DNA of 64,000 nucleotides, from IMG/VR virus record IMGVR_UViG_3300020380_000001, positions 124,001 to 188,000 of that record, one strand, 5' to 3'. Made by a program: the position numbers and the translations under genes. Every line of letters begins with the position of its first letter. Position 1 is the stretch's first letter. The notes beneath the pieces are model-generated. The model was given only the letters and a program-made list of their open reading frames with translations, searched no databases and was not told where the DNA came from. Below, piece by piece: positions 3,618-64,000 of this stretch.

Positions 3618-4659
3618 TTTCAAATATGCGGTTGACATTGAGTCAGTCGGCCTTGACTACTGGCGCTGGCTTAACAGCTATAAGAACACGCCTGGACTAA
3701 TCAGTGAGATAAGAGGCTTTCACCGCGCCCGTAGGCCATTTAATATTGTGTGTCCGTACGAAGCGTATGTTGGTATAGACAACCAATACAATTCGTTGCT
3801 TGAAGCAGTAAACGGTGACGCTGACTATATTAAAAACTACGTAACGGTTATTGCTGGGTCTGAACCCCGCAAGAATGCAGAGCGCTATAAACGAGTCGTT
3901 TACGGATCTTTTATCTTTGATTGGATGCAACATGATCCATACAGTGTGCCTGCATATAACGATAAGATACCCGAGCATGACTTCTTGTCGTTTAATCGCA
4001 TTATACGGCCGCACCGTTTGATGTTGATTGCTGCACTTGCGCATATAGGCCTACTCGACAAGAACTTAGTGAGTTACACACTAGCTCAGTTAGAACACTT
4101 TCCTAAGTTTGCATTAGACGGTGTTGCGTGCGTGCCAGATGAACGCGCCAAAAAGATAACAGAAATATTGGCTGAGTTACCTACTGAGCAAAAAGCTGAC
4201 CCGATTACGTGGGATTCTAATTTGTCAGTAATGACAGCGCCAAGTGATCTTTACGAAAATGCCTTTTATAGTCTTGTAACGGAAACCGCATTCTTTGAAG
4301 ATGATCCGTTCTTGACTGAAAAGATCATTAAGCCGCTGACATACGGGCATCCGTTCATTACATTAGCGCCTAAGAACACCCTGTCGCTTCTACAAGCGTA
4401 CGGCTTTAAAACCTACTCAAGTATATTCGATGAATCATACGACACTGTAGACGAAGGCTACGTGCGATTTAGACGCGTGATAAAGGAAGTTGTCCGTATT
4501 GCTAACTTGACACAAGAAGATAAGGCGCATTTGTTCGCGAGTGCACGTGAAATAGGTGAACATAACAGTGCCCACTTTAAAAAGAATGTCAAACAGATAA
4601 TTGAAATGTCTAGTAACATTAATGAGCACTTGGATATCAAGAACAAAGTCTTGCGTTAG
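3589..4659 (+). CDS. putative glycosyltransferase (GT10/fucosyltransferase-like C-terminal motif)
   Basis: YSLVTET...FLTEKIIKP...GHPFI...GFKTYSSIFDESYD resembles the nucleotide-sugar-binding E...Y/FxTEK motif; translationally coupled to ugd. Confidence 0.5.
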   Translation: METLVANHYDFKYAVDIESVGLDYWRWLNSYKNTPGLISEIRGFHRARRPFNIVCPYEAYVGIDNQYNSLLEAVNGDADYIKNYVTVIAGSEPRKNAERYKRVVYGSFIFDWMQHDPYSVPAYNDKIPEHDFLSFNRIIRPHRLMLIAALAHIGLLDKNLVSYTLAQLEHFPKFALDGVACVPDERAKKITEILAELPTEQKADPITWDSNLSVMTAPSDLYENAFYSLVTETAFFEDDPFLTEKIIKPLTYGHPFITLAPKNTLSLLQAYGFKTYSSIFDESYDTVDEGYVRFRRVIKEVVRIANLTQEDKAHLFASAREIGEHNSAHFKKNVKQIIEMSSNINEHLDIKNKVLR

Positions 4660-7080: not shown

Positions 7081-7414
7081 GTATTACCCCCACAATAATA
7101 ATAGCTCTACGGATCATAGCAGAGCCCGCAAGCTTGCTGAATGTCGCGTGTTTCTCTGTATCAATAGACTCGCGCATATCGGCAGCGATGTTATGTGGCC
7201 TAAAGTTAGGGAACAACATCAAGTCAATACCGTAGCCCAAGACCGCTGCTATCGACACAAGTGATAATTTATAAAGAACTAAAGGTACTTTGACCGGGCT
7301 TAGTAATCCTATGGTTACTAATAATAGTAAAGTTACGACGATGAAAGTTATCCGTCCTTGGTAAACTGGTCTCATTATGTTATGCTCCTTTAAAAGACTA
7401 TAATATTTAGTCAC
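7058..7414 (-). CDS. putative 2/3-TM holin
   Basis: Multiple TM segments, C-terminal RRAIIIVGVILGVSLGI typical of the 2/3-TM holin family, directly upstream of the SLT; likely start 7375. Confidence 0.75.
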   Translation of the reverse strand: MTKYYSLLKEHNIMRPVYQGRITFIVVTLLLLVTIGLLSPVKVPLVLYKLSLVSIAAVLGYGIDLMLFPNFRPHNIAADMRESIDTEKHATFSKLAGSAMIRRAIIIVGVILGVSLGI

Positions 7415-44868: not shown

Positions 44869-45226
44869 TGGGTATTCCTTTTTCTAGAGCTTGAATTTCA
44901 CCGGTATCAGTGTCTAATACGTAGACAAATACACGGCAGTATGAACGTATTGTTGCGATGCGGCACTGTCTACGGTCTGACTGAGAAACTAGTTGCTCGC
45001 AGCCTGACAATGTGGTGTTAAATGCAATGCGGTCCTGGCCGCTCACATTAGTACAATCTTGTTCAGTAAATGGTTGGAATCGGGAACAACCGGTGATAAA
45101 CAGTAATGGGACTAACACACCTAATAGTTTTCGCATACTTCGTTGCTCCGTTATAAATAAGGCCCGGGCGCTTTGAGCAGAACAGACGGCCAGTGCTGTA
45201 TCTACCCATAACGCCCTTGAAGGCAT
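44825..45226 (-). CDS. putative lipoprotein
   Basis: Internal MRKLLGVLVPLLFITGC lipobox suggests a true start near 45136. Confidence 0.55.
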   Translation of the reverse strand: MPSRALWVDTALAVCSAQSARALFITEQRSMRKLLGVLVPLLFITGCSRFQPFTEQDCTNVSGQDRIAFNTTLSGCEQLVSQSDRRQCRIATIRSYCRVFVYVLDTDTGEIQALEKGIPSGSNDSEERHETRD

Positions 45227-45323
45227 AGAATCATCCCTCTATATGTTTTTTGCGCACGGCATACGCGCCGTGGTGGGATTTGCGCCCAAATGAAGCATGC
45301 CAACCAATTTAACTGGTTGAAAA

Positions 45324-45446
45324 GGGTGGAGAGTAAGGAATCGAACCAAATCCGCCGGCTTGGGTTTAATGAAAACTTGCTGTTAGAATACTAATACAGT
45401 ATTCGTTTCATTCGGGGCCGGAGTGCAACCATTACACTTCATCTCC
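45324..45446 (-). ncRNA. tRNA-like gene with structured insert in the anticodon loop (degenerate scaffold)
   Basis: D arm GTGT/GCAC, anticodon stem CCGGC/GCCGG, TTCGATT T loop, imperfect acceptor, ends ACCC; insert carries the 27-nt core at 45378-45404. Confidence 0.65.
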
Positions 45447-45466
45447 ATATTCGCTATTATACGTTT

Positions 45467-45703
45467 TTACTTGTTAGTGTCAAGTAGTTTTAGCAAATTT
45501 TTTAAAAATTCTGGATCTTGTTGTTGGACTGGCGCAGTAGTTGGAATTGGAACGGCGCGTACAAACTCGGGTTCTTTATTTCGTTTGCATGACATGACAC
45601 ATCCGCATGTCATATCAAAAGCAGATTCACCAAAACCGTGACTCACGATGTCTTCTACTTCAGTGACACAGTTGCAATTGGTGCATATTATTATTTCATT
45701 CAT
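45467..45703 (-). CDS. small Zn-ribbon-like protein
   Basis: CxxCxC...CGCxxxC. Confidence 0.6.
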   Translation of the reverse strand: MNEIIICTNCNCVTEVEDIVSHGFGESAFDMTCGCVMSCKRNKEPEFVRAVPIPTTAPVQQQDPEFLKNLLKLLDTNK

Positions 45704-45752
45704 TATAGTTGCTCATATAACAGATGGGCCAAAGGTATCGCGGATAGCAGGG

Positions 45753-46124
45753 CTAAAGGTACTCTATGTCTATTACCTTAGCACTAGGCACAGTGAACTC
45801 AGTCTCACGATCAGTTATATTACCAAAAATGATATCGTTTGGGTTGAACTCAAACGTTACCAGTATTTCTTCTTCTGCTAGGCCGCTATAATAGTCAAGC
45901 ACATAATCACGGTCAAGTGACATGTAAATGCCGTTACCGGGCATTCGCATCGTATCGCCTTTCTTTATATCAAGCACTATGCGATTGTTGGCGCCTGCTA
46001 CTACTTTGCCGTTTTCTATGGCCATGACTTTATAGCCGGTCATAGTTTGATTTCCGGCAATGTTTTCAGCCATGCTACGTAGTACAGCCGATACATCATC
46101 CTGAAAAAGTTCATCTAAAATCAT
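45753..46124 (-). CDS. late protein, possible ADP-ribosyltransferase fold
   Basis: GNGIYMS...YY...ETEF pattern; TAAATA at 46149. Confidence 0.45.
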   Translation of the reverse strand: MILDELFQDDVSAVLRSMAENIAGNQTMTGYKVMAIENGKVVAGANNRIVLDIKKGDTMRMPGNGIYMSLDRDYVLDYYSGLAEEEILVTFEFNPNDIIFGNITDRETEFTVPSAKVIDIEYL

Positions 46125-46175
46125 ACAAGTTCCCGTTAGTTGTTACACTATTTATATGATTTTAGTTGAACGCTT

Positions 46176-46433
46176 TCAATCCTGTGCGGGAAAGCGAACA
46201 GCAACCTGATTGCCATTTGTGTCAATACCATTGACAGACCAGGTTTTGTTAATATGATTTTGACGCACCATGGCAGTCAATGTCACAGATTCACCAGTTG
46301 TGAACTCCACGAGCATCTTACACATATGGGTGTCAACAAATTGCAGATCATCAAAGTCCACAGATTCGACAACGCGGGTGTCATACCCGCGATATCGTTT
46401 ACTAAACCATTTGAGTGTTATTACTTCCATCAA
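46176..46433 (-). CDS. hypothetical protein
   Basis: 85 aa. Confidence 0.65.
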   Translation of the reverse strand: MMEVITLKWFSKRYRGYDTRVVESVDFDDLQFVDTHMCKMLVEFTTGESVTLTAMVRQNHINKTWSVNGIDTNGNQVAVRFPAQD

Positions 46434-46810
46434 CCTCTCGCTTGTTTCATTGCTTCAATATCATCTTCGTCGTACAAATACGCATCACCAACAGCGTCGT
46501 GGGCTGGGCTACCGTAACGCGGCGCTACAGCGTACCATAAATCTGAACGGTGTAATTTGGGATAGCGGCCTTCTTCAGAAATTTTATGACGCATAATGTT
46601 TAAGCGCTCACGTTGCAAGTTCAAATCTTCGCTTGCAGCAACATGGCGATAACGCTTACCGTTGAATAATTCAACTTGGAAATAATAAACATCAACGATG
46701 ACGTTTTCACCGTCTTCAGTGTAATGACCAGCTTTATATTGCTTATCAGAAACAATCTCAAGCGAATGTATTTGAACGCCTTCTAGGGCTTTGGTGTACT
46801 TGTCTGTCAT
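46430..46810 (-). CDS. hypothetical protein
   Basis: 126 aa, strong promoter upstream. Confidence 0.75.
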   Translation of the reverse strand: MTDKYTKALEGVQIHSLEIVSDKQYKAGHYTEDGENVIVDVYYFQVELFNGKRYRHVAASEDLNLQRERLNIMRHKISEEGRYPKLHRSDLWYAVAPRYGSPAHDAVGDAYLYDEDDIEAMKQARG

Positions 46811-46845
46811 ATCGTTTTACCTTGTTTTGTTAGTTTACAATAGAT

Positions 46846-46873
46846 ATGATAGCGCCTTGAGCGTCAATGTCAA
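46846..46873 (-). promoter_or_regulatory. early sigma70 promoter with UP element
   Basis: TTGACA-16-TATCAT, A/T tract upstream. Confidence 0.7.
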
Positions 46874-47129
46874 GGCCTTTTTGAAGAAAAATTAAAAATT
46901 ATTCTTATTCAGCTTAGCTCTGCACGAGTCGCTGCGTCAAGCAAGTCAGTGATAGTTTTCAAGTAGCCTAGACGCAAGTTAACACCGTGGCCGTCGCAAT
47001 CATTGCCAACGTAGCGCGCCATTTCTTCTCTCAGTGCTGCCGCCGACATGTTTTGTAATTTTTCAAATGCTTTGTTTTTCATGATATTACCTTATTAATT
47101 GGGAGGAAGGGAGGGTTGTTAAACAACCC

Positions 47130-47402
47130 TTAGCGTAAGTAAGTTTGCTTCAAACTGTCAATCCAGTTTGTCATGCTTACTAGTTGCTTCTGAGTCATGC
47201 GCTCAGTGCCTGCCAATTCAAGCACTTCGTCTAACATGTAACCAATTTGGTCGCTGTTAGCGTAGTAAGGATTATTTTTGCTTAACACATAACCAGTGTT
47301 ACGTGTACGACGCTTAACGAAATTTTTAAGGTCAGCCACAGTGTGCTTTGGCTTTTCAATCAACGCTAGCTGTTCTTTTTTAATGCTGTTCAAAGTGTTC
47401 AT
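47130..47402 (-). CDS. hypothetical protein
   Basis: 90 aa, SD AAGGT; terminator hairpin right after the stop. Confidence 0.75.
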   Translation of the reverse strand: MNTLNSIKKEQLALIEKPKHTVADLKNFVKRRTRNTGYVLSKNNPYYANSDQIGYMLDEVLELAGTERMTQKQLVSMTNWIDSLKQTYLR

Positions 47403-47443
47403 AGTGTCTTACCTTTGTTTGTTAAATGTCGTCTTCAGTATCT

Positions 47444-47471
47444 ATATTACTACCTTGACGACCAAAGTCAA
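47444..47471 (-). promoter_or_regulatory. early sigma70 promoter with UP element
   Basis: TTGACT-16-TAATAT, A/T tract upstream. Confidence 0.65.
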
Positions 47472-47507
47472 CACCTATTTGAAAAAAATTTCAATTATTT
47501 TTCGACA

Positions 47508-47951
47508 CTACTTTAGGAAGCATTTTGACATTAAGCTGCCGGCAGGTATAATAATATAGTACACCGCGTTGTCACCGTGTCCCATTTCATTCCAAAAAAA
47601 CAACACATAATCACCTGAGTTTATTTCCTGGATTACTAACGACTCACCGTGCATTTCGTTAATGCTAAACGGATCAAGGTTAGTGTTGTATTGCACCGGC
47701 GCGGATATAAATTCCAAACCATCTCGCTCTACGCCAATTAAATCAGCTATCACTGACTCATCAGCGTCAACAATATAAAGGTAAAAACCTTCCACGCTAG
47801 GGTCAAGATTTATAATACCGTTGCACAGCACGTTTGATACCATGCCCGGAGGGATAGGGGTATGTAACACAGAACCAGGGCGTATAAAAGAAAGTGATGA
47901 AAGTCCCGATCTAACAATGCCGTCAACGGTGTTTGCGATTAAGTGAGTCAT
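47508..47951 (-). CDS. hypothetical protein
   Basis: 147 aa. Confidence 0.7.
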   Translation of the reverse strand: MTHLIANTVDGIVRSGLSSLSFIRPGSVLHTPIPPGMVSNVLCNGIINLDPSVEGFYLYIVDADESVIADLIGVERDGLEFISAPVQYNTNLDPFSINEMHGESLVIQEINSGDYVLFFWNEMGHGDNAVYYIIIPAGSLMSKCFLK

Positions 47952-48004
47952 ACTATTGCCTTTTTAAGAATTAGTTCAAAGACAGTATTACATGGTGTGA
48001 GATT

Positions 48005-48176
48005 GAAAACAAGACTATTCGCGAGTTGTCTTGCCGGTCATTTGTTCCTACCTTCTAATTGCCATTTAGTAAGGCTGACCCCGGACCTTCCCCTAACAAG
48101 TTAGGCTAGCTGGTTAAGTAGCTGGCTGGGCTACACAGCACATACGGCTCCAGTTTGTCGCGATCCGGTCTTTTTC
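48005..48176 (-). ncRNA. candidate structured ncRNA
   Basis: ORF-free about 170 nt with CCTAAC/GTTAGG, CCTT(A)CTAA/TTAGAAGG and CAAGAC/GTCTTG hairpins, and possible GACC-GGA/TCC-GGTC pairing. Confidence 0.4.
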
Positions 48177-48178
48177 GT

Positions 48179-48457
48179 TTAATCCTTGGATGTCTTTTCA
48201 ACATCCTCGATATTCTGCATTACATCCTGTCTGAATGCTTTATACGCGCTCGCTAGTACATCAGGTCGCGTTAAACCAATCCACCACGACATAATGTTAT
48301 TGATTCTATTTGAATCGTCAGACGGTGCCTGTGGCGTTTTAAACCAATGAAATACAGTTAGCATACCTAGCAGGGTAAAGAATATACCGCCAACTGAGAG
48401 TAAAAATAAGAATAGTGACAGAATCATAGAATCTCCTTTTCTTTTATTTACTCTCAC
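48179..48457 (-). CDS. small membrane protein
   Basis: N-terminal TM; likely start at MILSLF. Confidence 0.7.
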   Translation of the reverse strand: MRVNKRKGDSMILSLFLFLLSVGGIFFTLLGMLTVFHWFKTPQAPSDDSNRINNIMSWWIGLTRPDVLASAYKAFRQDVMQNIEDVEKTSKD

Positions 48458-48941
48458 CGACTGCTGACTTTATCAGTTCTGCCTCGCCGCTTGCGACGAT
48501 GTCAAATTCAGCTTGCGCTTTCTTGAATGCTCGTTGCTTTTTCTCTTTGAGTGCGGTTATTTCGTCGGCATACGCATTAATAAAGTGCGCTTTGCCTTCC
48601 GGGTTTAGTAAGTTCCATAAGTAGAAAACTGACACGAAATCGTTATACGGGTTGTCAAGCTTGGCACGCAATACTTGTACTGAATTAAAGTACTCAACCC
48701 CACGAAGTTCGCGCGGGTATGCGCCACTTATTTCGATATTGTATTCTTTATTTTCGTGACGAGTCCAGCCATTACTTTTGCCAAGAAAATCGCCCTCGAC
48801 TTCAGTGAATTCAATATCAAAGTATGACATGAATGTTTTCATTTCAATGCGTGCTGGTTTCTTGAAGTTGATTGTATTTCTATCAACGGCCGCGGCAATG
48901 GTTTCAATACCAGGCGACAGGATAAAAGCTTCTTTCATCAC
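48444..48941 (-). CDS. hypothetical protein
   Basis: 165 aa. Confidence 0.75.
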   Translation of the reverse strand: MMKEAFILSPGIETIAAAVDRNTINFKKPARIEMKTFMSYFDIEFTEVEGDFLGKSNGWTRHENKEYNIEISGAYPRELRGVEYFNSVQVLRAKLDNPYNDFVSVFYLWNLLNPEGKAHFINAYADEITALKEKKQRAFKKAQAEFDIVASGEAELIKSAVGESK

Positions 48942-48955
48942 TTACTCAATAAGGT

Positions 48956-49032
48956 TGGAGCACACTGCGGGATTCGAACCCGCGTAATCTGGATTTGCAA
49001 TCCAGTGCCTATATCCACTCGGCCAAGCGTGC
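48956..49032 (-). tRNA. tRNA-Cys(GCA)
   Basis: Full cloverleaf, CTGGA-TTGCAAA-TCCAG, U73, encoded CCA. Confidence 0.95.
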
Positions 49033-49039
49033 TTTATAT

Positions 49040-49279
49040 TTAAGAACAAGAAGTTGCAACAAGCGCAACGGCGTCAACTAGTGCAAGAATTTCATTTTCA
49101 GTTTTGTTTTCTAAACTCTCAAAACATATGTCCATTGACGTACAATCAACGAACTGGAGTTCGAACGAGTCAGTCATTGTCGGAATTACGCCGACGTGAA
49201 ACATAATCGGTGCCTTGTCGCGAATACGTGCAGACAATTCGTTAAAGAATTCTTTTGAAATAATCTTCTTGTTTGTCAT
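49040..49279 (-). CDS. hypothetical protein
   Basis: 79 aa. Confidence 0.65.
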   Translation of the reverse strand: MTNKKIISKEFFNELSARIRDKAPIMFHVGVIPTMTDSFELQFVDCTSMDICFESLENKTENEILALVDAVALVATSCS

Positions 49280-49287
49280 CTTTTTTC

Positions 49288-49866
49288 CTAGTATGTACTT
49301 ACGTCTTGTGCGAACTCGTCGCCAAATCCAACCAATAACTCAGTCATGTTTTGGCAATCAAGGTAGTTGGCAGCGTGCACATCTGCAAAAACAGCAACGT
49401 CACCGCGCTCGCGGGGCTCTAGCATTTCTGTCGATCTAGCTAAAGTTTCGACGTCCATTTCATAATGTGATTTGATGTACGCACCGTTTACAATGCTACC
49501 CAGACGCTGTCCATCTGCGTTGCCGCCATATACCATGAATTCTTCCACGATATAGTTACCAATTGGCATTGAGAATGATTCACTGTCAATCACTGCGATA
49601 CGGTATTCACCGATTTCGCACACTAACACACCTTCAAGCCCAGTAGCACCTTCGTGCTTTACTAGATCAGGCGTTTTAAGCATAGATATAACTTCGTCTA
49701 TGTGTTCTTGACCTTTGCATAGTGCAAGGCTTGTGCCGTCAGAGCCGCTAATATCGAGTTCAATACAAGCCGGTGGTGTTACGCTTGATTGGCAGTAAAA
49801 TGTACCTTCGAGGTTAAGTTTACTGCCCGGGTAGTGGATTTCTACCTTGTGCGGTACGAGTTCCAT
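49288..49866 (-). CDS. hypothetical protein
   Basis: 192 aa, SD GGAG. Confidence 0.75.
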   Translation of the reverse strand: MELVPHKVEIHYPGSKLNLEGTFYCQSSVTPPACIELDISGSDGTSLALCKGQEHIDEVISMLKTPDLVKHEGATGLEGVLVCEIGEYRIAVIDSESFSMPIGNYIVEEFMVYGGNADGQRLGSIVNGAYIKSHYEMDVETLARSTEMLEPRERGDVAVFADVHAANYLDCQNMTELLVGFGDEFAQDVSTY

Positions 49867-49956
49867 GATCGTTCTCCGTTACGTAAAGTCCAATTACTCT
49901 ACTTCGTGCATTATAACACCGGATCCAAATCAGTCAACTGTTTTGTGAAAAATGAT

Positions 49957-50100
49957 TTATTTCTTTTTCTTCTTGTCTTTTTTGGCTGGTGTTGCTTTTT
50001 CTTCAACTTTTACTTTAGGTACGCTAACTGCTTGAGGTTCAATGTTATTTGCAAACACTGATTCTATTAGTTCAACAAACCATATTCCGTTTTTTCCCAT
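49957..50100 (-). CDS. small Lys-rich peptide (47 aa)
   Basis: SD GGAGG; MGKNGIWFVEL...KKDKKKKK. Confidence 0.55.
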   Translation of the reverse strand: MGKNGIWFVELIESVFANNIEPQAVSVPKVKVEEKATPAKKDKKKKK

Positions 50101-50238
50101 ATATCCTCCGTTATTATGATGATGGTGACCCTAGTGAAAATTAAACAAGCTTGATGGCGAGGTTAGATTCAGAAGGAGACGGTCTTATAAGTATATACTA
50201 GAAAATTTCATTAATTACCGGCATGCGGTGTAAAGAAG

Positions 50239-50359
50239 TGGTAGGGAGTGCAGGACTCGAACCTGCGACCAACGGCTTATCAGGCAAAAAGGATATGCTG
50301 TTAGAATACTAATACAGTATTCATTTTTACGTTGCTCTACCCAACTGAGCTAACTCCCT
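50239..50359 (-). tRNA. tRNA-Ile(GAT) interrupted by a 44-nt insert (50286-50329) between positions 29 and 30
   Basis: Removing the insert gives a perfect 77-nt cloverleaf: AGGGAGT/ACTCCCT, GCTC/GAGC, ACGGC-CTGATAA-GCCGT, GCAGG-TTCGAGT-CCTGC, ACCA. Confidence 0.85.
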
Positions 50360-50570
50360 AGAAGTTTCTAATGAACTGTCTTAAGTCTTTGACACCTCCA
50401 CATCCGAGTATTATTAACCCACCTAGTGGCAACATGCTAAAAATACCTGCGAGTGCGTTAAACGCGAAGCAGTATATGATGGCCATTACTAAACCAATAT
50501 TAAGGGTTAGTATACCAGCCATCAAAAGCATTGCACAAAAACGGGCTAATGTTTTAAATGTTGTTTCCAT
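50358..50570 (-). CDS. membrane protein
   Basis: 70 aa, two TM segments. Confidence 0.7.
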   Translation of the reverse strand: METTFKTLARFCAMLLMAGILTLNIGLVMAIIYCFAFNALAGIFSMLPLGGLIILGCGGVKDLRQFIRNF

Positions 50571-50591
50571 TTTCTTAGTATGAACCCAAGT

Positions 50592-50867
50592 TTACTTTTT
50601 GTCAAGGAATTTTTTAAAATCGCTGTAAATTTCTATACCGGCTTCATCAACTTCTGATTGTGTCAAAAACGCCGAGTCCGAGTACAATGTGCCGTCGCGT
50701 TTAATGAAGTAAAACCGATCATCGACTTTGCCCAACACAGCACCCCGTTCCAAAAGTCCAGGCACCATATCAATCAAAGAGTCTGCGCCAAACACGGTGC
50801 CCTTAAACAATTCAGCATCAGGCACTACACCAATCAAAACGCTGGTAACATCATCTATTGTTGCCAT
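50592..50867 (-). CDS. hypothetical protein
   Basis: 91 aa, SD GAGG. Confidence 0.7.
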   Translation of the reverse strand: MATIDDVTSVLIGVVPDAELFKGTVFGADSLIDMVPGLLERGAVLGKVDDRFYFIKRDGTLYSDSAFLTQSEVDEAGIEIYSDFKKFLDKK

Positions 50868-63999: not shown

Positions 64000-64000
64000 C

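What the first reader, a model, noticed from the sequence alone, without database searches (positions are those of the whole stretch)
50239..50359. tRNA-Ile(GAU) split at the non-canonical 29/30 position by a 44-nt insert
Seen: deleting 50286-50329 restores a flawless 77-nt tRNA-Ile with the anticodon stem ACGGC/GCCGT. Every exon stem is intact, which argues for continued selection rather than decay. The two junctions face each other at the base of an AAAAA/UUUUU stem instead of being staggered by 4 bp, so this is not a canonical archaeal BHB. Inference: the tRNA is either spliced by an unknown activity or folds with the insert looped out of the anticodon stem, which would give conditional activation of an Ile tRNA.
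Basis: partly seen in the sequence, partly recalled or inferred. Interest (0 to 1): 0.82.

Follow-up and report, generated by a model that had tools for sequence, protein, structure and literature searches.

The report
Y-RNA-like tRNA mimic, not intron
What looks like an isoleucine tRNA gene split by a 44-base insert is most likely a phage version of a bacterial Y RNA: a tRNA look-alike whose "insert" is a conserved docking module, probably for a Ro60-like protein, and not a tRNA waiting to be spliced.

Summary
On the minus strand, 50359..50239, deleting 50329..50286 gives a 77-nt cloverleaf that ARAGORN calls tRNA-Ile(GAT). The insert is not a one-off. It is a conserved RNA module: an A-rich leader, a 6-7 bp hairpin, 3-5 nt, then an invariant C-N-G-C-A. 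A second copy lies at window 45371-45415. The module recurs in tRNA clusters of Straboviridae, Kyanoviridae and jumbo phages. It sits at 28/29 or 29/30 of complete tRNAs, in scaffolds that can never give a tRNA, in bare minihelices, and split across circularly permuted units that hit Rfam YrlA below threshold. The tRNA body of this gene is 84% identical to a real Rsr-linked YrlA but 63% identical to the phage's own uninterrupted tRNA-Ile(GAT). The 7-nt "anticodon" loop is hypervariable on a constant body; the closest relative has TGT. Module loci are linked to a DUF2828/DUF7788 protein in 17/35 loci against 0/154 controls, and its model best matches Ro60 structures. Bacteria carry the same unpermuted architecture beside rsr. 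No spliced reads were found. The best reading is a Y-RNA-like tRNA mimic, a new variant of a known kind. No Ro-like gene was found in the 94 kb of this phage that I could inspect.

The parts
50239..50359 (-). Whole gene (w1): tRNA-like RNA of 121 nt with the module inserted between tRNA positions 29 and 30; CCA is encoded
50330..50359 (-). 5' part: acceptor 5' strand, D arm and positions 26-29 (..GAGCAACG). Shares the junction signature GAGC-NN-CG|TAAA with YrlA RNAs
50286..50329 (-). 44-nt insert, a conserved RNA module that scores 35 bits with covariance model R1
50304..50322 (-). Module hairpin GAATACT-GTATT-AGTATTC. The stem covaries across the family
50295..50300 (-). CAGCAT, the family motif C-N-G-C-A-(A/T). 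C, G, C and A are invariant in 28 instances
50239..50285 (-). 3' part: positions 30-76, with an anticodon-like mini-hairpin (50275-50285, GC-CTGATAA-GC), variable loop, T arm, acceptor 3' strand and ACCA
45324..45447 (-). Second carrier (w2): a degenerate tRNA-like scaffold with an intact 5-bp stem CCGGC/GCCGG enclosing the module. No deletion gives a canonical tRNA
45371..45415 (-). Module copy in w2 (R1 32.5 bits). The core 45378-45404 is 27/27 identical to w1 and unchanged in the 90%-identical relative L182

Best explanation
The locus encodes a Y-RNA-like tRNA mimic, a relative of bacterial YrlA, in 'unpermuted' topology. It is transcribed with the neighbouring tRNAs. Because it keeps a full acceptor/T/D framework and an encoded CCA, its ends are probably matured by the tRNA-processing enzymes (inferred). 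The 44-nt 'insert' is not removed. It branches from the anticodon stem after pair 29-41, the same place where YrlA continues into its Ro-binding stem. It displays a hairpin plus the C-N-G-C-A motif as a docking site. The most likely partner is the phage Ro60-like TROVE+vWA protein of the DUF2828/DUF7788 family (PHROG 850) (inferred from linkage, not shown). By analogy with Rsr-Y RNA-PNPase and with the phiLo Ro60-Yrl complex, the RNP would act in RNA surveillance, repair or degradation during infection. The retained, hypervariable 7-nt anticodon-like loop would be a specificity or decoy surface rather than a decoding anticodon (speculative).
For: (1) The module is a family. There are 28 aligned instances with invariant C, G, C, A. 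The hairpin is 97% paired, all 6 pairs show double-sided changes, and 0/500 shuffles reach the observed values. Model R1 finds exactly two copies in the window.
(2) The module occurs where no tRNA can result. These contexts are intact stems enclosing it (w2, nt-1, V07, L153), arm-less scaffolds (L124, L130, L134), and a bare minihelix ending GCCA (L142, L159, L165, L171).
(3) There are circularly permuted units whose two ends rebuild the module hairpin. They hit Rfam YrlA at 36-46 bits, E 3e-7 to 2e-4.
(4) A real Rsr-YrlB-YrlA locus (L176; YrlA 63.9 bits; TROVE + vWA_Ro60) has the same 29/30 junction, the same junction letters ACG|TAAA, and even a retained anticodon hairpin.
(5) The w1 exons are 84% identical to that YrlA once de-permuted, against 63% to the phage's own tRNA-Ile(GAT).
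(6) Linkage is strong. The DUF2828/DUF7788 gene is present in 17/35 module loci against 0/154 control loci, Fisher p 7e-15. It lies immediately upstream on the same strand in BUCT-ZZ01, 2.6 kb away in Aeh1, and is present in nt-1, V07, F86, QD01, CZ01, VS1 and VS2.
(7) The protein is Ro60-like. hhalign against Rsr gives 96.5% probability, E 8e-10. The AF2 model's top PDB matches are the phiLo phage Ro60 9kop (E 9e-10), Rsr 2nvo and human Ro60 9nen. PHROG 850 covers both it and Rsr over their full length.
(8) Bacterial genomes hold the same unpermuted split-tRNA architecture. In 12 loci, for example in Chryseobacterium, it lies within the same fetched locus (up to 8 kb) as a Ro60 homologue, about 300 nt upstream of it where measured. 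In total 19/32 signature loci have a Ro homologue.
(9) The RNA type tracks the protein type. CNGCAW modules go with DUF2828-type proteins, including the prophage-like L228, while classical Y stems go with TROVE-type Rsr.
(10) The gene is redundant as a decoder and its anticodon has drifted.
(11) The module core shows 0 changes in 2 x 27 nt at 10% background divergence.
Against: No Ro-like gene was found in the window or its flanks, about 94 kb of a roughly 307 kb genome. None lies near the other jumbo-phage carriers either (L182, L184, L187, L193, L197-199). Neither w1 nor an unpermuted bacterial counterpart (L211, next to rsr) scores against Rfam YrlA; a permuted-order model would not be expected to align to them. 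The module lacks the Ro-binding GNCGAA/CGAA motif, and no binding data exist. In w1, B1, B2, Aeh1-b and L127-a the anticodon arm is perfect with U33 and R37, and it is fully conserved between Aeh1 and phiAS5, which is what a decoding tRNA would also show. The hairpin covariation statistics are partly circular, because the search pattern forced the inner pairs. The RNA evidence is only presence of the unspliced form in contigs from metatranscriptomes, which may include DNA.
Confidence: 0.6

Rival explanations
1. The insert is a true tRNA intron of a new, protein-dependent kind. An unknown endonuclease recognises the module and cuts at both junctions, and a phage or host RNA ligase (Rnl or RtcB) joins positions 29 and 30 to give a working tRNA.
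For: Clean single-deletion tRNAs with different, correctly paired split stems occur in at least 6 unrelated tRNA bodies, always at 28/29 or 29/30. The anticodon arm is conserved between Aeh1 and phiAS5 while the insert diverges. Permuted units resemble the permuted tRNA genes of Cyanidioschyzon merolae, which need cutting and ligation (the comparison is from my own knowledge). An RNA ligase sits next to the Ro-like gene in GAP32.
Against: The junctions lie 6-9 nt and 7-9 nt from the conserved core, so there is no fixed ruler (and manual count). The closing stem is not conserved. Many carriers cannot give a tRNA. The anticodon is hypervariable on one body, including GCT on a class-I body and loops without U33. 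A normal tRNA-Ile(GAT) is present. No endonuclease or ligase appears among 60 window ORFs. No joint is seen in 4 runs.
Confidence: 0.17
2. The RNA is a tRNA-scaffolded decoy or sensor aimed at host tRNA-targeting defences such as anticodon nucleases. It acts without any Ro-like partner, and the module binds some other factor.
For: The anticodon-like loop is hypervariable on a constant body, which suggests arms-race style diversification. There is no Ro-like gene within 94 kb in this phage. Phage tRNAs are known to counter tRNA-cleaving defences (titles).
Against: This does not explain the strong linkage to the Ro-like gene or the YrlA-type body and junction. It is compatible with the best explanation as a downstream function.
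Confidence: 0.12
3. The gene is a dead tRNA gene disrupted by a small mobile palindromic element. It is a pseudogene kept only by chance.
For: The core is identical between the two copies in one genome (w1/w2 27/27; B1/B2 34/34), as expected after recent copying. Scaffolds such as w2 are degenerate.
Against: Non-anticodon exon positions show 1 change in 74 and the module core 0 in 54, against 10% background. The hairpin has compensatory changes including G-U pairs on the sense strand. The architecture is conserved from cyanophage to vibriophage and into bacteria.
Confidence: 0.05
4. The unspliced tRNA is itself charged and used on the ribosome with the insert looped out, giving conditional Ile decoding.
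For: The minimum-free-energy fold keeps the acceptor, D and T arms with the module as a separate hairpin.
Against: A 44-nt branch on the anticodon stem is hard to fit in the ribosomal decoding sites (general knowledge). The anticodon changes between close relatives, and a normal tRNA-Ile is present.
Confidence: 0.03

Closest known systems
YrlA (Rfam RF02553), the bacterial and phage Y RNA-like tRNA mimics bound by Rsr/Ro60 (Chen et al. 2014, PMC4201824)
   Same: Both have a tRNA-like D arm, T arm and acceptor. The anticodon stem stops after pairs 26-29/41-44 and a heterologous protein-binding stem is attached there. The junction letters are the same (GAGC-NN-CG|UAAA). The body is 84% identical to an Rsr-linked YrlA (L176). 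Both families are linked to a Ro60-family gene.
   Different: The topology is the circular permutation of YrlA: w1 has free acceptor ends plus CCA and a closed module hairpin, whereas YrlA has a closed acceptor and termini in the Ro stem. The module carries C-N-G-C-A instead of GNCGAA. The linked protein belongs to the DUF2828/DUF7788 branch, not to classical TROVE Rsr. A full 7-nt anticodon-like loop is retained and is hypervariable. w1 does not score against RF02553.
Thermus phage phiLo Ro60 with Yrl1/Yrl2 (Hu et al. 2025, PMC12135203; PDB 9KOP)
   Same: A phage-encoded Ro60 homologue with phage-encoded partner RNAs next to its gene. 9KOP is the best structural match of the protein linked to the module.
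   Different: As that paper describes them, the phiLo Yrls are stem-bulge-stem Y RNAs with a CGAA motif, not tRNA-shaped RNAs with free acceptor ends. No binding has been tested for the module studied here.
Unpermuted split-tRNA-like RNAs next to a Ro60/TROVE gene in Bacteroidota and other bacteria (found here)
   Same: The architecture is identical to w1: normal-order tRNA-like halves, an insert after ...GAGCAACG|TAAA, and a T arm downstream. They lie in the same fetched locus as a Ro60 homologue, about 300 nt upstream of it where measured.
   Different: Their insert is a longer Y-type stem (ACUUUAU.../...AUAAAGUUACUUCG) and the partner is TROVE-type Rsr. The one such locus tested (L211) matches no Rfam family. 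I found no description of this form in the papers I read.
Archaeal BHB tRNA introns at non-canonical positions, including 29/30
   Same: A short insert at 29/30 whose deletion restores a perfect tRNA.
   Different: There is no bulge-helix-bulge and no staggered 3-nt bulges. The setting is bacterial phages, and no splicing endonuclease was seen.
Phage T4 stable RNAs rnaC and rnaD (species 1 and 2)
   Same: Stable RNAs of unknown function, about 120-140 nt, encoded in a T4-type tRNA cluster with tRNA-like 3' features.
   Different: The module model R1 finds nothing in the T4 tRNA region fetched here (L122, which holds rnaC and rnaD) at E<=1. No homology was shown.
Permuted tRNA-like genes (two-piece tmRNA; permuted tRNA genes of Cyanidioschyzon)
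   Same: Relatives of w1 exist in circularly permuted gene order. A permuted tmRNA sits in one such phage cluster.
   Different: w1 itself is in normal order. Maturation of the permuted relatives is unknown.

Membership tests
YrlA / Y RNA-like tRNA mimics | tRNA-like domain with D arm, T arm and acceptor stem | tested here: met
   7-bp acceptor, GCTC/GAGC D stem, GCAGG/CCTGC T stem with a TTCGAGT loop
YrlA / Y RNA-like tRNA mimics | Anticodon stem truncated after about 3-4 bp, with a heterologous stem attached at that point | tested here: met
   The module leaves the stem at 29/30. The Rfam YrlA consensus helix ggcg/cgcc ends at the same place, with the same letters CG|UAAA
YrlA / Y RNA-like tRNA mimics | Reaches the Rfam RF02553 gathering score (69 bits) | tested here: not met
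   w1 gets no hit at E<=10. Its order is permuted relative to the model. Permuted relatives score 36-46 bits, and the Rsr-linked L176 itself scores 63.9
YrlA / Y RNA-like tRNA mimics | Conserved Ro-binding motif GNCGAA(N)G / CGAA in the attached stem | tested here: not met
   The module has C-N-G-C-A-(A/T) instead
YrlA / Y RNA-like tRNA mimics | Encoded next to a Ro60/Rsr orthologue | tested here: inconclusive
   Met for the family: 17/35 loci against 0/154 controls, plus BUCT-ZZ01, Aeh1, phiAS5 and nt-1. Not met within 94 kb of this phage; about 213 kb remain unseen
YrlA / Y RNA-like tRNA mimics | Bound by the Ro60 orthologue | not testable with these tools
   Needs RIP or EMSA
Ro60/TROVE proteins (for the linked DUF2828/DUF7788 protein) | HEAT-repeat ring plus a C-terminal vWA domain with a MIDAS motif | tested here: met
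   hhalign 96.5% (DVSGSM aligned). Foldseek top hits 9kop, 2nvo and 9nen over about 510-530 columns, TM 0.40-0.56. PHROG 850 is shared with Rsr. The model pLDDT is only 69.7
Archaeal/eukaryal BHB tRNA intron | Two 3-nt bulges separated by a 4-bp helix that holds both splice sites | tested here: not met
   The junctions face each other. The last bases of exon 1 cannot pair with the 3' end of the insert (sequence)
Archaeal/eukaryal BHB tRNA intron | Spliced product detectable | tested here: inconclusive
   No joints in runs X1, X2, X10, X12. The unspliced form is present in X1 and X12. The data are contigs only
Group I self-splicing tRNA intron | Ribozyme core of about 200 nt or more, placed in the anticodon loop | tested here: not met
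   The insert is 44 nt and lies in the stem. No Rfam intron or ribozyme hit at E<=10
Canonical elongator tRNA-Ile(GAU) | Contiguous cloverleaf recognised by tRNA finders | tested here: not met
   ARAGORN and Rfam tRNA fail on the gene as encoded
Canonical elongator tRNA-Ile(GAU) | Anticodon conserved among orthologues and matched to the body | tested here: not met
   GAT changes to TGT in L182 with 1/66 body changes. The same body carries GTT, TCT, TGG, GTA, GCT and GAG elsewhere
T4 rnaC/rnaD | Sequence or structure similarity to the T4 species 1/2 RNAs | tested here: not met
   R1 finds nothing in L122

The most novel reading that the evidence does not exclude
T4-type and jumbo phages may carry a programmable family of tRNA mimics: one constant YrlA-type body, a docking module for a Ro60-like RNP, and a rapidly diversifying 7-nt anticodon-like loop. 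The loop would pick out particular host or rival tRNAs, or tRNA-cleaving defence nucleases, for capture, repair or destruction. Alternatively, the module may mark a previously unknown protein-dependent cut-and-ligate pathway that matures split and permuted tRNAs in bacteria.
Probability: 0.2. Interest if true: 0.9.

Novelty: new variant of a known kind. Interest (0 to 1): 0.62.

Why it matters
Hundreds of sequenced phages, including KVP40-like vibriophages, Aeh1-like Aeromonas phages and cyanophages, encode the Ro60-like "RNA-binding protein" (710 records). None of the records and papers I inspected named a partner RNA for it. In the records I inspected, the unannotated "split tRNAs" in their tRNA clusters are missed by tRNA finders or mis-annotated (for example Aeh1 "tRNA-Val, 122 nt"). 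Recognising them as Y-RNA-like mimics supplies candidate partner RNAs. It also shows that Y RNAs exist in an unpermuted, tRNA-ended topology that the Rfam model does not capture, in bacteria as well. The work defines a new RNA module (hairpin + CNGCA) that can be tested directly. The hypervariable anticodon-like loop is unexpected, and it makes the open question of what the tRNA-like half of bacterial Y RNAs does experimentally approachable in tractable phage-host pairs. For genome annotation, it warns against calling such loci intron-containing tRNAs.

Tried and rejected
- BHB folding by hand: no register works.
- Rfam at the gathering threshold and at E<=10 on the window and on related loci: nothing beyond tRNA and YrlA, and no ribozyme or intron family.
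- T4 rnaC/rnaD as homologues: rejected by R1.
- Module hairpin as an anticodon-arm or TGT (UGU) mimic: the loops include GATA, GCCA and GATT, and they swap between orthologous RNAs of nt-1 and V07, so this was rejected.
- Pairing between the module (UAUUAG) and the w1 anticodon loop: not kept in L182, so it is coincidence.
- The "permuted Ile/Asn tRNA" contig in metatranscriptomes X2 and X12: first read as a permuted orthologue, it turned out to be a bacterial-type Rsr-YrlA locus.
- Brute-force single deletions with ARAGORN on w2: only permissive, inconsistent calls.
- Megablast of the region against phages: no match.
- Literature searches for phage tRNA introns, KVP40/Aeh1 tRNA introns and DUF2828: nothing relevant.
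- Search for a Ro-like gene, RNA ligase or endonuclease in the window ORFs and in 30 kb of flanks: none found.
- Walking the remaining ~213 kb of the genome was abandoned as too costly in look-ups.

Full report
**1. The observation**

The feature lies on the minus strand. Reading 50359..50239 gives three pieces: a 30-nt 5' piece ending GAGCAACG, a 44-nt insert (50329..50286), and a 47-nt 3' piece that starts GCCTGATAAGCCGT and ends ACCA. ARAGORN and the Rfam tRNA model both miss the gene as encoded, even at E<=10. A scan of every deletion register gives one best solution, between tRNA positions 29 and 30. With the insert removed, ARAGORN calls a 77-nt tRNA-Ile(gat) with all stems intact.

**2. 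The insert is a conserved module**

- The only hit in the phage collection was Synechococcus phage BUCT-ZZ01. There, two adjacent unannotated genes carry a near-identical 41-42-nt insert at the same 29/30 site. One has anticodon GTT and the other CAT.
- Using that pair as a query found the same arrangement in Vibrio phages nt-1, V07, F86, QD01, CZ01 and VS1/VS2, and in Aeromonas phage Aeh1.
- Inside the window, a second copy of the insert core (27/27 identical) lies at 45404..45378, within a degenerate tRNA-like gene.
- Pattern scans of IMG/VR gave many more instances.
- Twenty-eight instances align to this layout: an A-rich leader, a 6-7-bp hairpin usually closed by CU/AG and capped GNNA, 3-5 nt, then C-N-G-C-A-(A/T) with C, G, C and A invariant.
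- The hairpin is 97% paired, and every pair shows changes on both sides. One caveat applies: my search pattern forced the inner pairs. The outermost pair was not forced, and it shows AU 9, UA 8, CG 6, GC 3.
- A covariance model (R1) finds exactly two copies in the window and none in the T4 tRNA region fetched here, which holds rnaC and rnaD.
- No Rfam family matches the module.

**3. Where the module sits**

- (A) In complete tRNAs, at 28/29 or 29/30. The bodies carry different anticodons: GAT, GTT, CAT, TAC and GTC.
- (B) Inside an intact 5-bp stem where no 7-nt loop can be recovered (w2, nt-1, V07, L153).
- (C) In scaffolds that lack a D arm or an anticodon arm (L124, L130, L134, L127, L171).
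- (D) In a bare minihelix GGGACA-[module]-TGTCCC-GCCA (L142, L159, L165, L171).
- (E) Split across circularly permuted units, in which the two ends of the unit rebuild the module hairpin (L142, L181, L189, L191, L009).

Contexts B to E cannot produce a tRNA by excising the module. In the clean cases the junctions lie 6-9 nt and 7-9 nt from the conserved core, so there is no fixed ruler. The AAAAA/UUUUU closing stem of w1 is lost in its closest relative.

**4. The link to Y RNAs**

Laying four public runs on 45100-50600 showed no spliced joint. It did show the unspliced locus in two metatranscriptomes: a 277-nt contig in X1 and a 161-nt contig in X12. This is weak evidence because the runs are stored as contigs, and DNA carry-over is possible.

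Two of the runs (X2, X12) also held a contig in which the w1-like 3' half precedes the 5' half. I fetched that contig (L176). It is an Rsr (TROVE + vWA_Ro60) - YrlB - YrlA - YrlB - YrlA locus, with Rfam YrlA hits of 63.9 and 47 bits.

YrlA is a tRNA mimic whose anticodon stem stops after pairs 26-29/41-44 and then continues into the Ro-binding stem. That is the same junction as in w1, with the same letters (GAGC-NN-CG|UAAA). The L176 RNA even keeps a GC-CUGUUAA-GC anticodon hairpin, so an intact anticodon hairpin does not prove decoding.

De-permuted, the L176 tRNA-like domain is 84% identical to the w1 exons. The phage's own uninterrupted tRNA-Ile(GAT), found about 5 kb beyond the window end, is only 63% identical. 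The permuted, module-bearing phage units score 36-46 bits against YrlA, E 3e-7 to 2e-4, which is below the gathering score.

**5. The linked protein**

A DUF2828 + DUF7788 protein is encoded next to the permuted units and several other carriers. In BUCT-ZZ01 it is the gene immediately upstream, on the same strand, of tRNA-Met and the two split genes. In Aeh1 it lies 2.6 kb upstream on the same strand. nt-1, V07, F86, QD01, CZ01, VS1, VS2 and phiAS5 all have it.

Among the IMG/VR loci I fetched, it is present in 17 of 35 module loci and in 0 of 154 control loci, Fisher p 7e-15. Some of those loci are related to one another, so they are not fully independent.

The protein is a Ro60 homologue:
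- hhalign against Rsr gives 96.5% probability, E 8e-10, with the MIDAS motif DVSGSM aligned.
- An AlphaFold model (pLDDT 69.7) has as its three best PDB matches the Thermus phage phiLo Ro60 (9kop, E 9e-10, TM 0.54/0.56), D. radiodurans Rsr (2nvo) and human Ro60 (9nen).
- PHROG 850 "RNA-binding protein" covers both this protein and the L176 Rsr over their full length.
- One GenBank record already calls it Ro sixty-related on the basis of HHpred.
- In GAP32 the gene sits beside an RNA ligase. From my own knowledge, this recalls the bacterial rsr-yrlA-rtcBA RNA-repair operon.

**6. Bacterial counterparts in the same topology**

I scanned one genome per species for the junction signature and found 32 loci. 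Nineteen of them have a Ro60 homologue within the fetched 8 kb or less. In twelve of those, the RNA is in normal tRNA order with the insert after ...CG|TAAA and the T arm downstream. Examples are Chryseobacterium, Soonwooa and other Bacteroidota, where the RNA lies about 300 nt upstream of a TROVE-type gene in the loci where I measured it. One MAG locus (L228) with a DUF2828-type protein has a CAGCAA module, while the TROVE-type loci carry classical Y-type stems. The RNA type therefore tracks the protein type. Rfam recognises nothing at the Chryseobacterium locus tested. The paper that defined YrlA (PMC4201824) describes only the form with a closed acceptor.

**7. Selection pattern**

A 310-kb contig (L182) is 89.9% identical to the window over 14 kb.
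- Its w1 orthologue differs at 6 of 121 positions: two in the anticodon (GAT to TGT, which ARAGORN calls Thr), one in the variable loop, and three at non-core insert positions.
- Exon 1, the acceptor, the T arm and the module core are unchanged.
- The w2 orthologue differs at about 17 positions, yet its core is still 27/27 identical.
- Across six close pairs of carriers that share this body, the 7-nt loop differs at 21/42 positions against 13/391 in the body. The loops include GCT on a class-I body and some without U33.

This pattern is the opposite of what a decoding tRNA shows. It fits a mimic whose loop is either free to vary or under diversifying selection.

**8. Conclusion and caveats**

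The most economical reading is that w1, and also w2, are Y-RNA-like tRNA mimics in unpermuted topology. The insert is the docking module and is not removed.

What is shown:
- the module family and its conservation;
- the YrlA-type body and junction;
- the linkage to a Ro60-like gene;
- the bacterial counterparts beside rsr;
- the redundancy of w1 as a decoder and the drift of its anticodon.

What is inferred:
- that the Ro-like protein binds the module;
- that the RNA is end-matured like a tRNA;
- that the RNP works in RNA surveillance or repair, by analogy with Rsr-Y RNA-PNPase and with phiLo Ro60-Yrl (PMC4201824, PMC12135203).

Main caveats:
- I found no Ro-like gene in the 94 kb of this phage that I could inspect, nor near the other jumbo-phage carriers.
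- The module lacks the CGAA motif.
- The perfect anticodon arms of some carriers would also fit a spliced tRNA.

I therefore keep a new protein-dependent splicing pathway as the main rival at about 0.17.

**9. Novelty**

Phage Ro60 homologues with Y-like RNAs are already known, in mycobacteriophages, CcrColossus, Bacillus phage G and phiLo (PMC4201824, PMC12135203, PMC7824862). As far as the library and Rfam show, the following are new:
- the unpermuted, tRNA-ended topology;
- the hairpin-CNGCA module;
- its pairing with the DUF2828/DUF7788 branch, which is present in 710 phage records;
- the hypervariable anticodon-like loop.

I classify the finding as a new variant of a known kind.

Noticed in passing
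window 45324-45447 (minus): A second module-bearing tRNA-like gene (w2). Its T stem is degenerate. Its 3' leftover segment varies among close relatives (X10, X2, L182), while the module core is invariant.
   Followed up: yes
L205 1-10000 (same phage, just beyond window position 64000): Fifteen more tRNA genes. They include an uninterrupted tRNA-Ile(GAT) at 4369-4446, a tRNA with anticodon TTA (ochre-suppressor-like) at 7274-7370, and unusually long Asn (92 nt), Lys (85) and Glu (85) calls. A YqeY-domain ORF lies among them.
   Followed up: partly
L134 6579-6848: A circularly permuted tmRNA (RF04321, 99 bits) in a phage tRNA cluster that also carries two module RNAs and the Ro-like gene.
   Followed up: no
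L121 ~1412-1530 (Aeh1) and L167 1911-2028 (phiAS5): A 118-nt tRNA-like gene with a second complete T-arm-like hairpin (AACGG-TTCGATT-CCGTT) in the variable region. It sits directly upstream of the module RNAs.
   Followed up: no
L121 1678-1799 (Aeh1 record AY266303.2): The annotated 122-nt 'tRNA-Val, CAC anticodon' is a module-bearing RNA. No deletion gives a canonical Val tRNA. The insert is flanked by short direct repeats (CGCA in Aeh1, CGAA in phiAS5).
   Followed up: partly
L119 1497-1612, L120 ~1500-1610, L171 ~1560-1680: CAT-type carriers in nt-1, V07 and an IMG/VR contig share an 8-nt loop ATTCATAA instead of a 7-nt anticodon loop.
   Followed up: no
L204 1004-3952 (GAP32): The Ro-like gene GAP32_176 lies directly downstream of an RNA ligase gene (GAP32_175). 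This resembles the bacterial rsr-rtcB repair context.
   Followed up: no
L176 8250-8830: A locus with Rsr followed by two YrlB-YrlA pairs. Its first YrlA keeps a full Asn-type anticodon hairpin. The same sequence forms contigs at depth 15-19 in marine metatranscriptomes X2 and X12.
   Followed up: partly
L185, L194, L195 (insert 3' flanks): The 3' flank of the insert repeats the exon-1 end (UUAACG...). It could therefore compete with exon 1 for pairing to positions 41-43, giving a possible two-state fold.
   Followed up: no
L217, L225, L229, L234 (Priestia/Bacillus genomes): The same 5' signature (AGCTCAGTTGGTAGAGCAGCG|TAAA) occurs without any T loop on either side, within a conserved repeated context. 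Its nature is unknown.
   Followed up: no
L122 1909-2172 (T4 rnaC, rnaD): The T4 stable RNAs are not members of the module family. rnaD has a superficially similar hairpin (TTCCCTGAGTAAGGAA), but no CNGCA motif follows it.
   Followed up: yes
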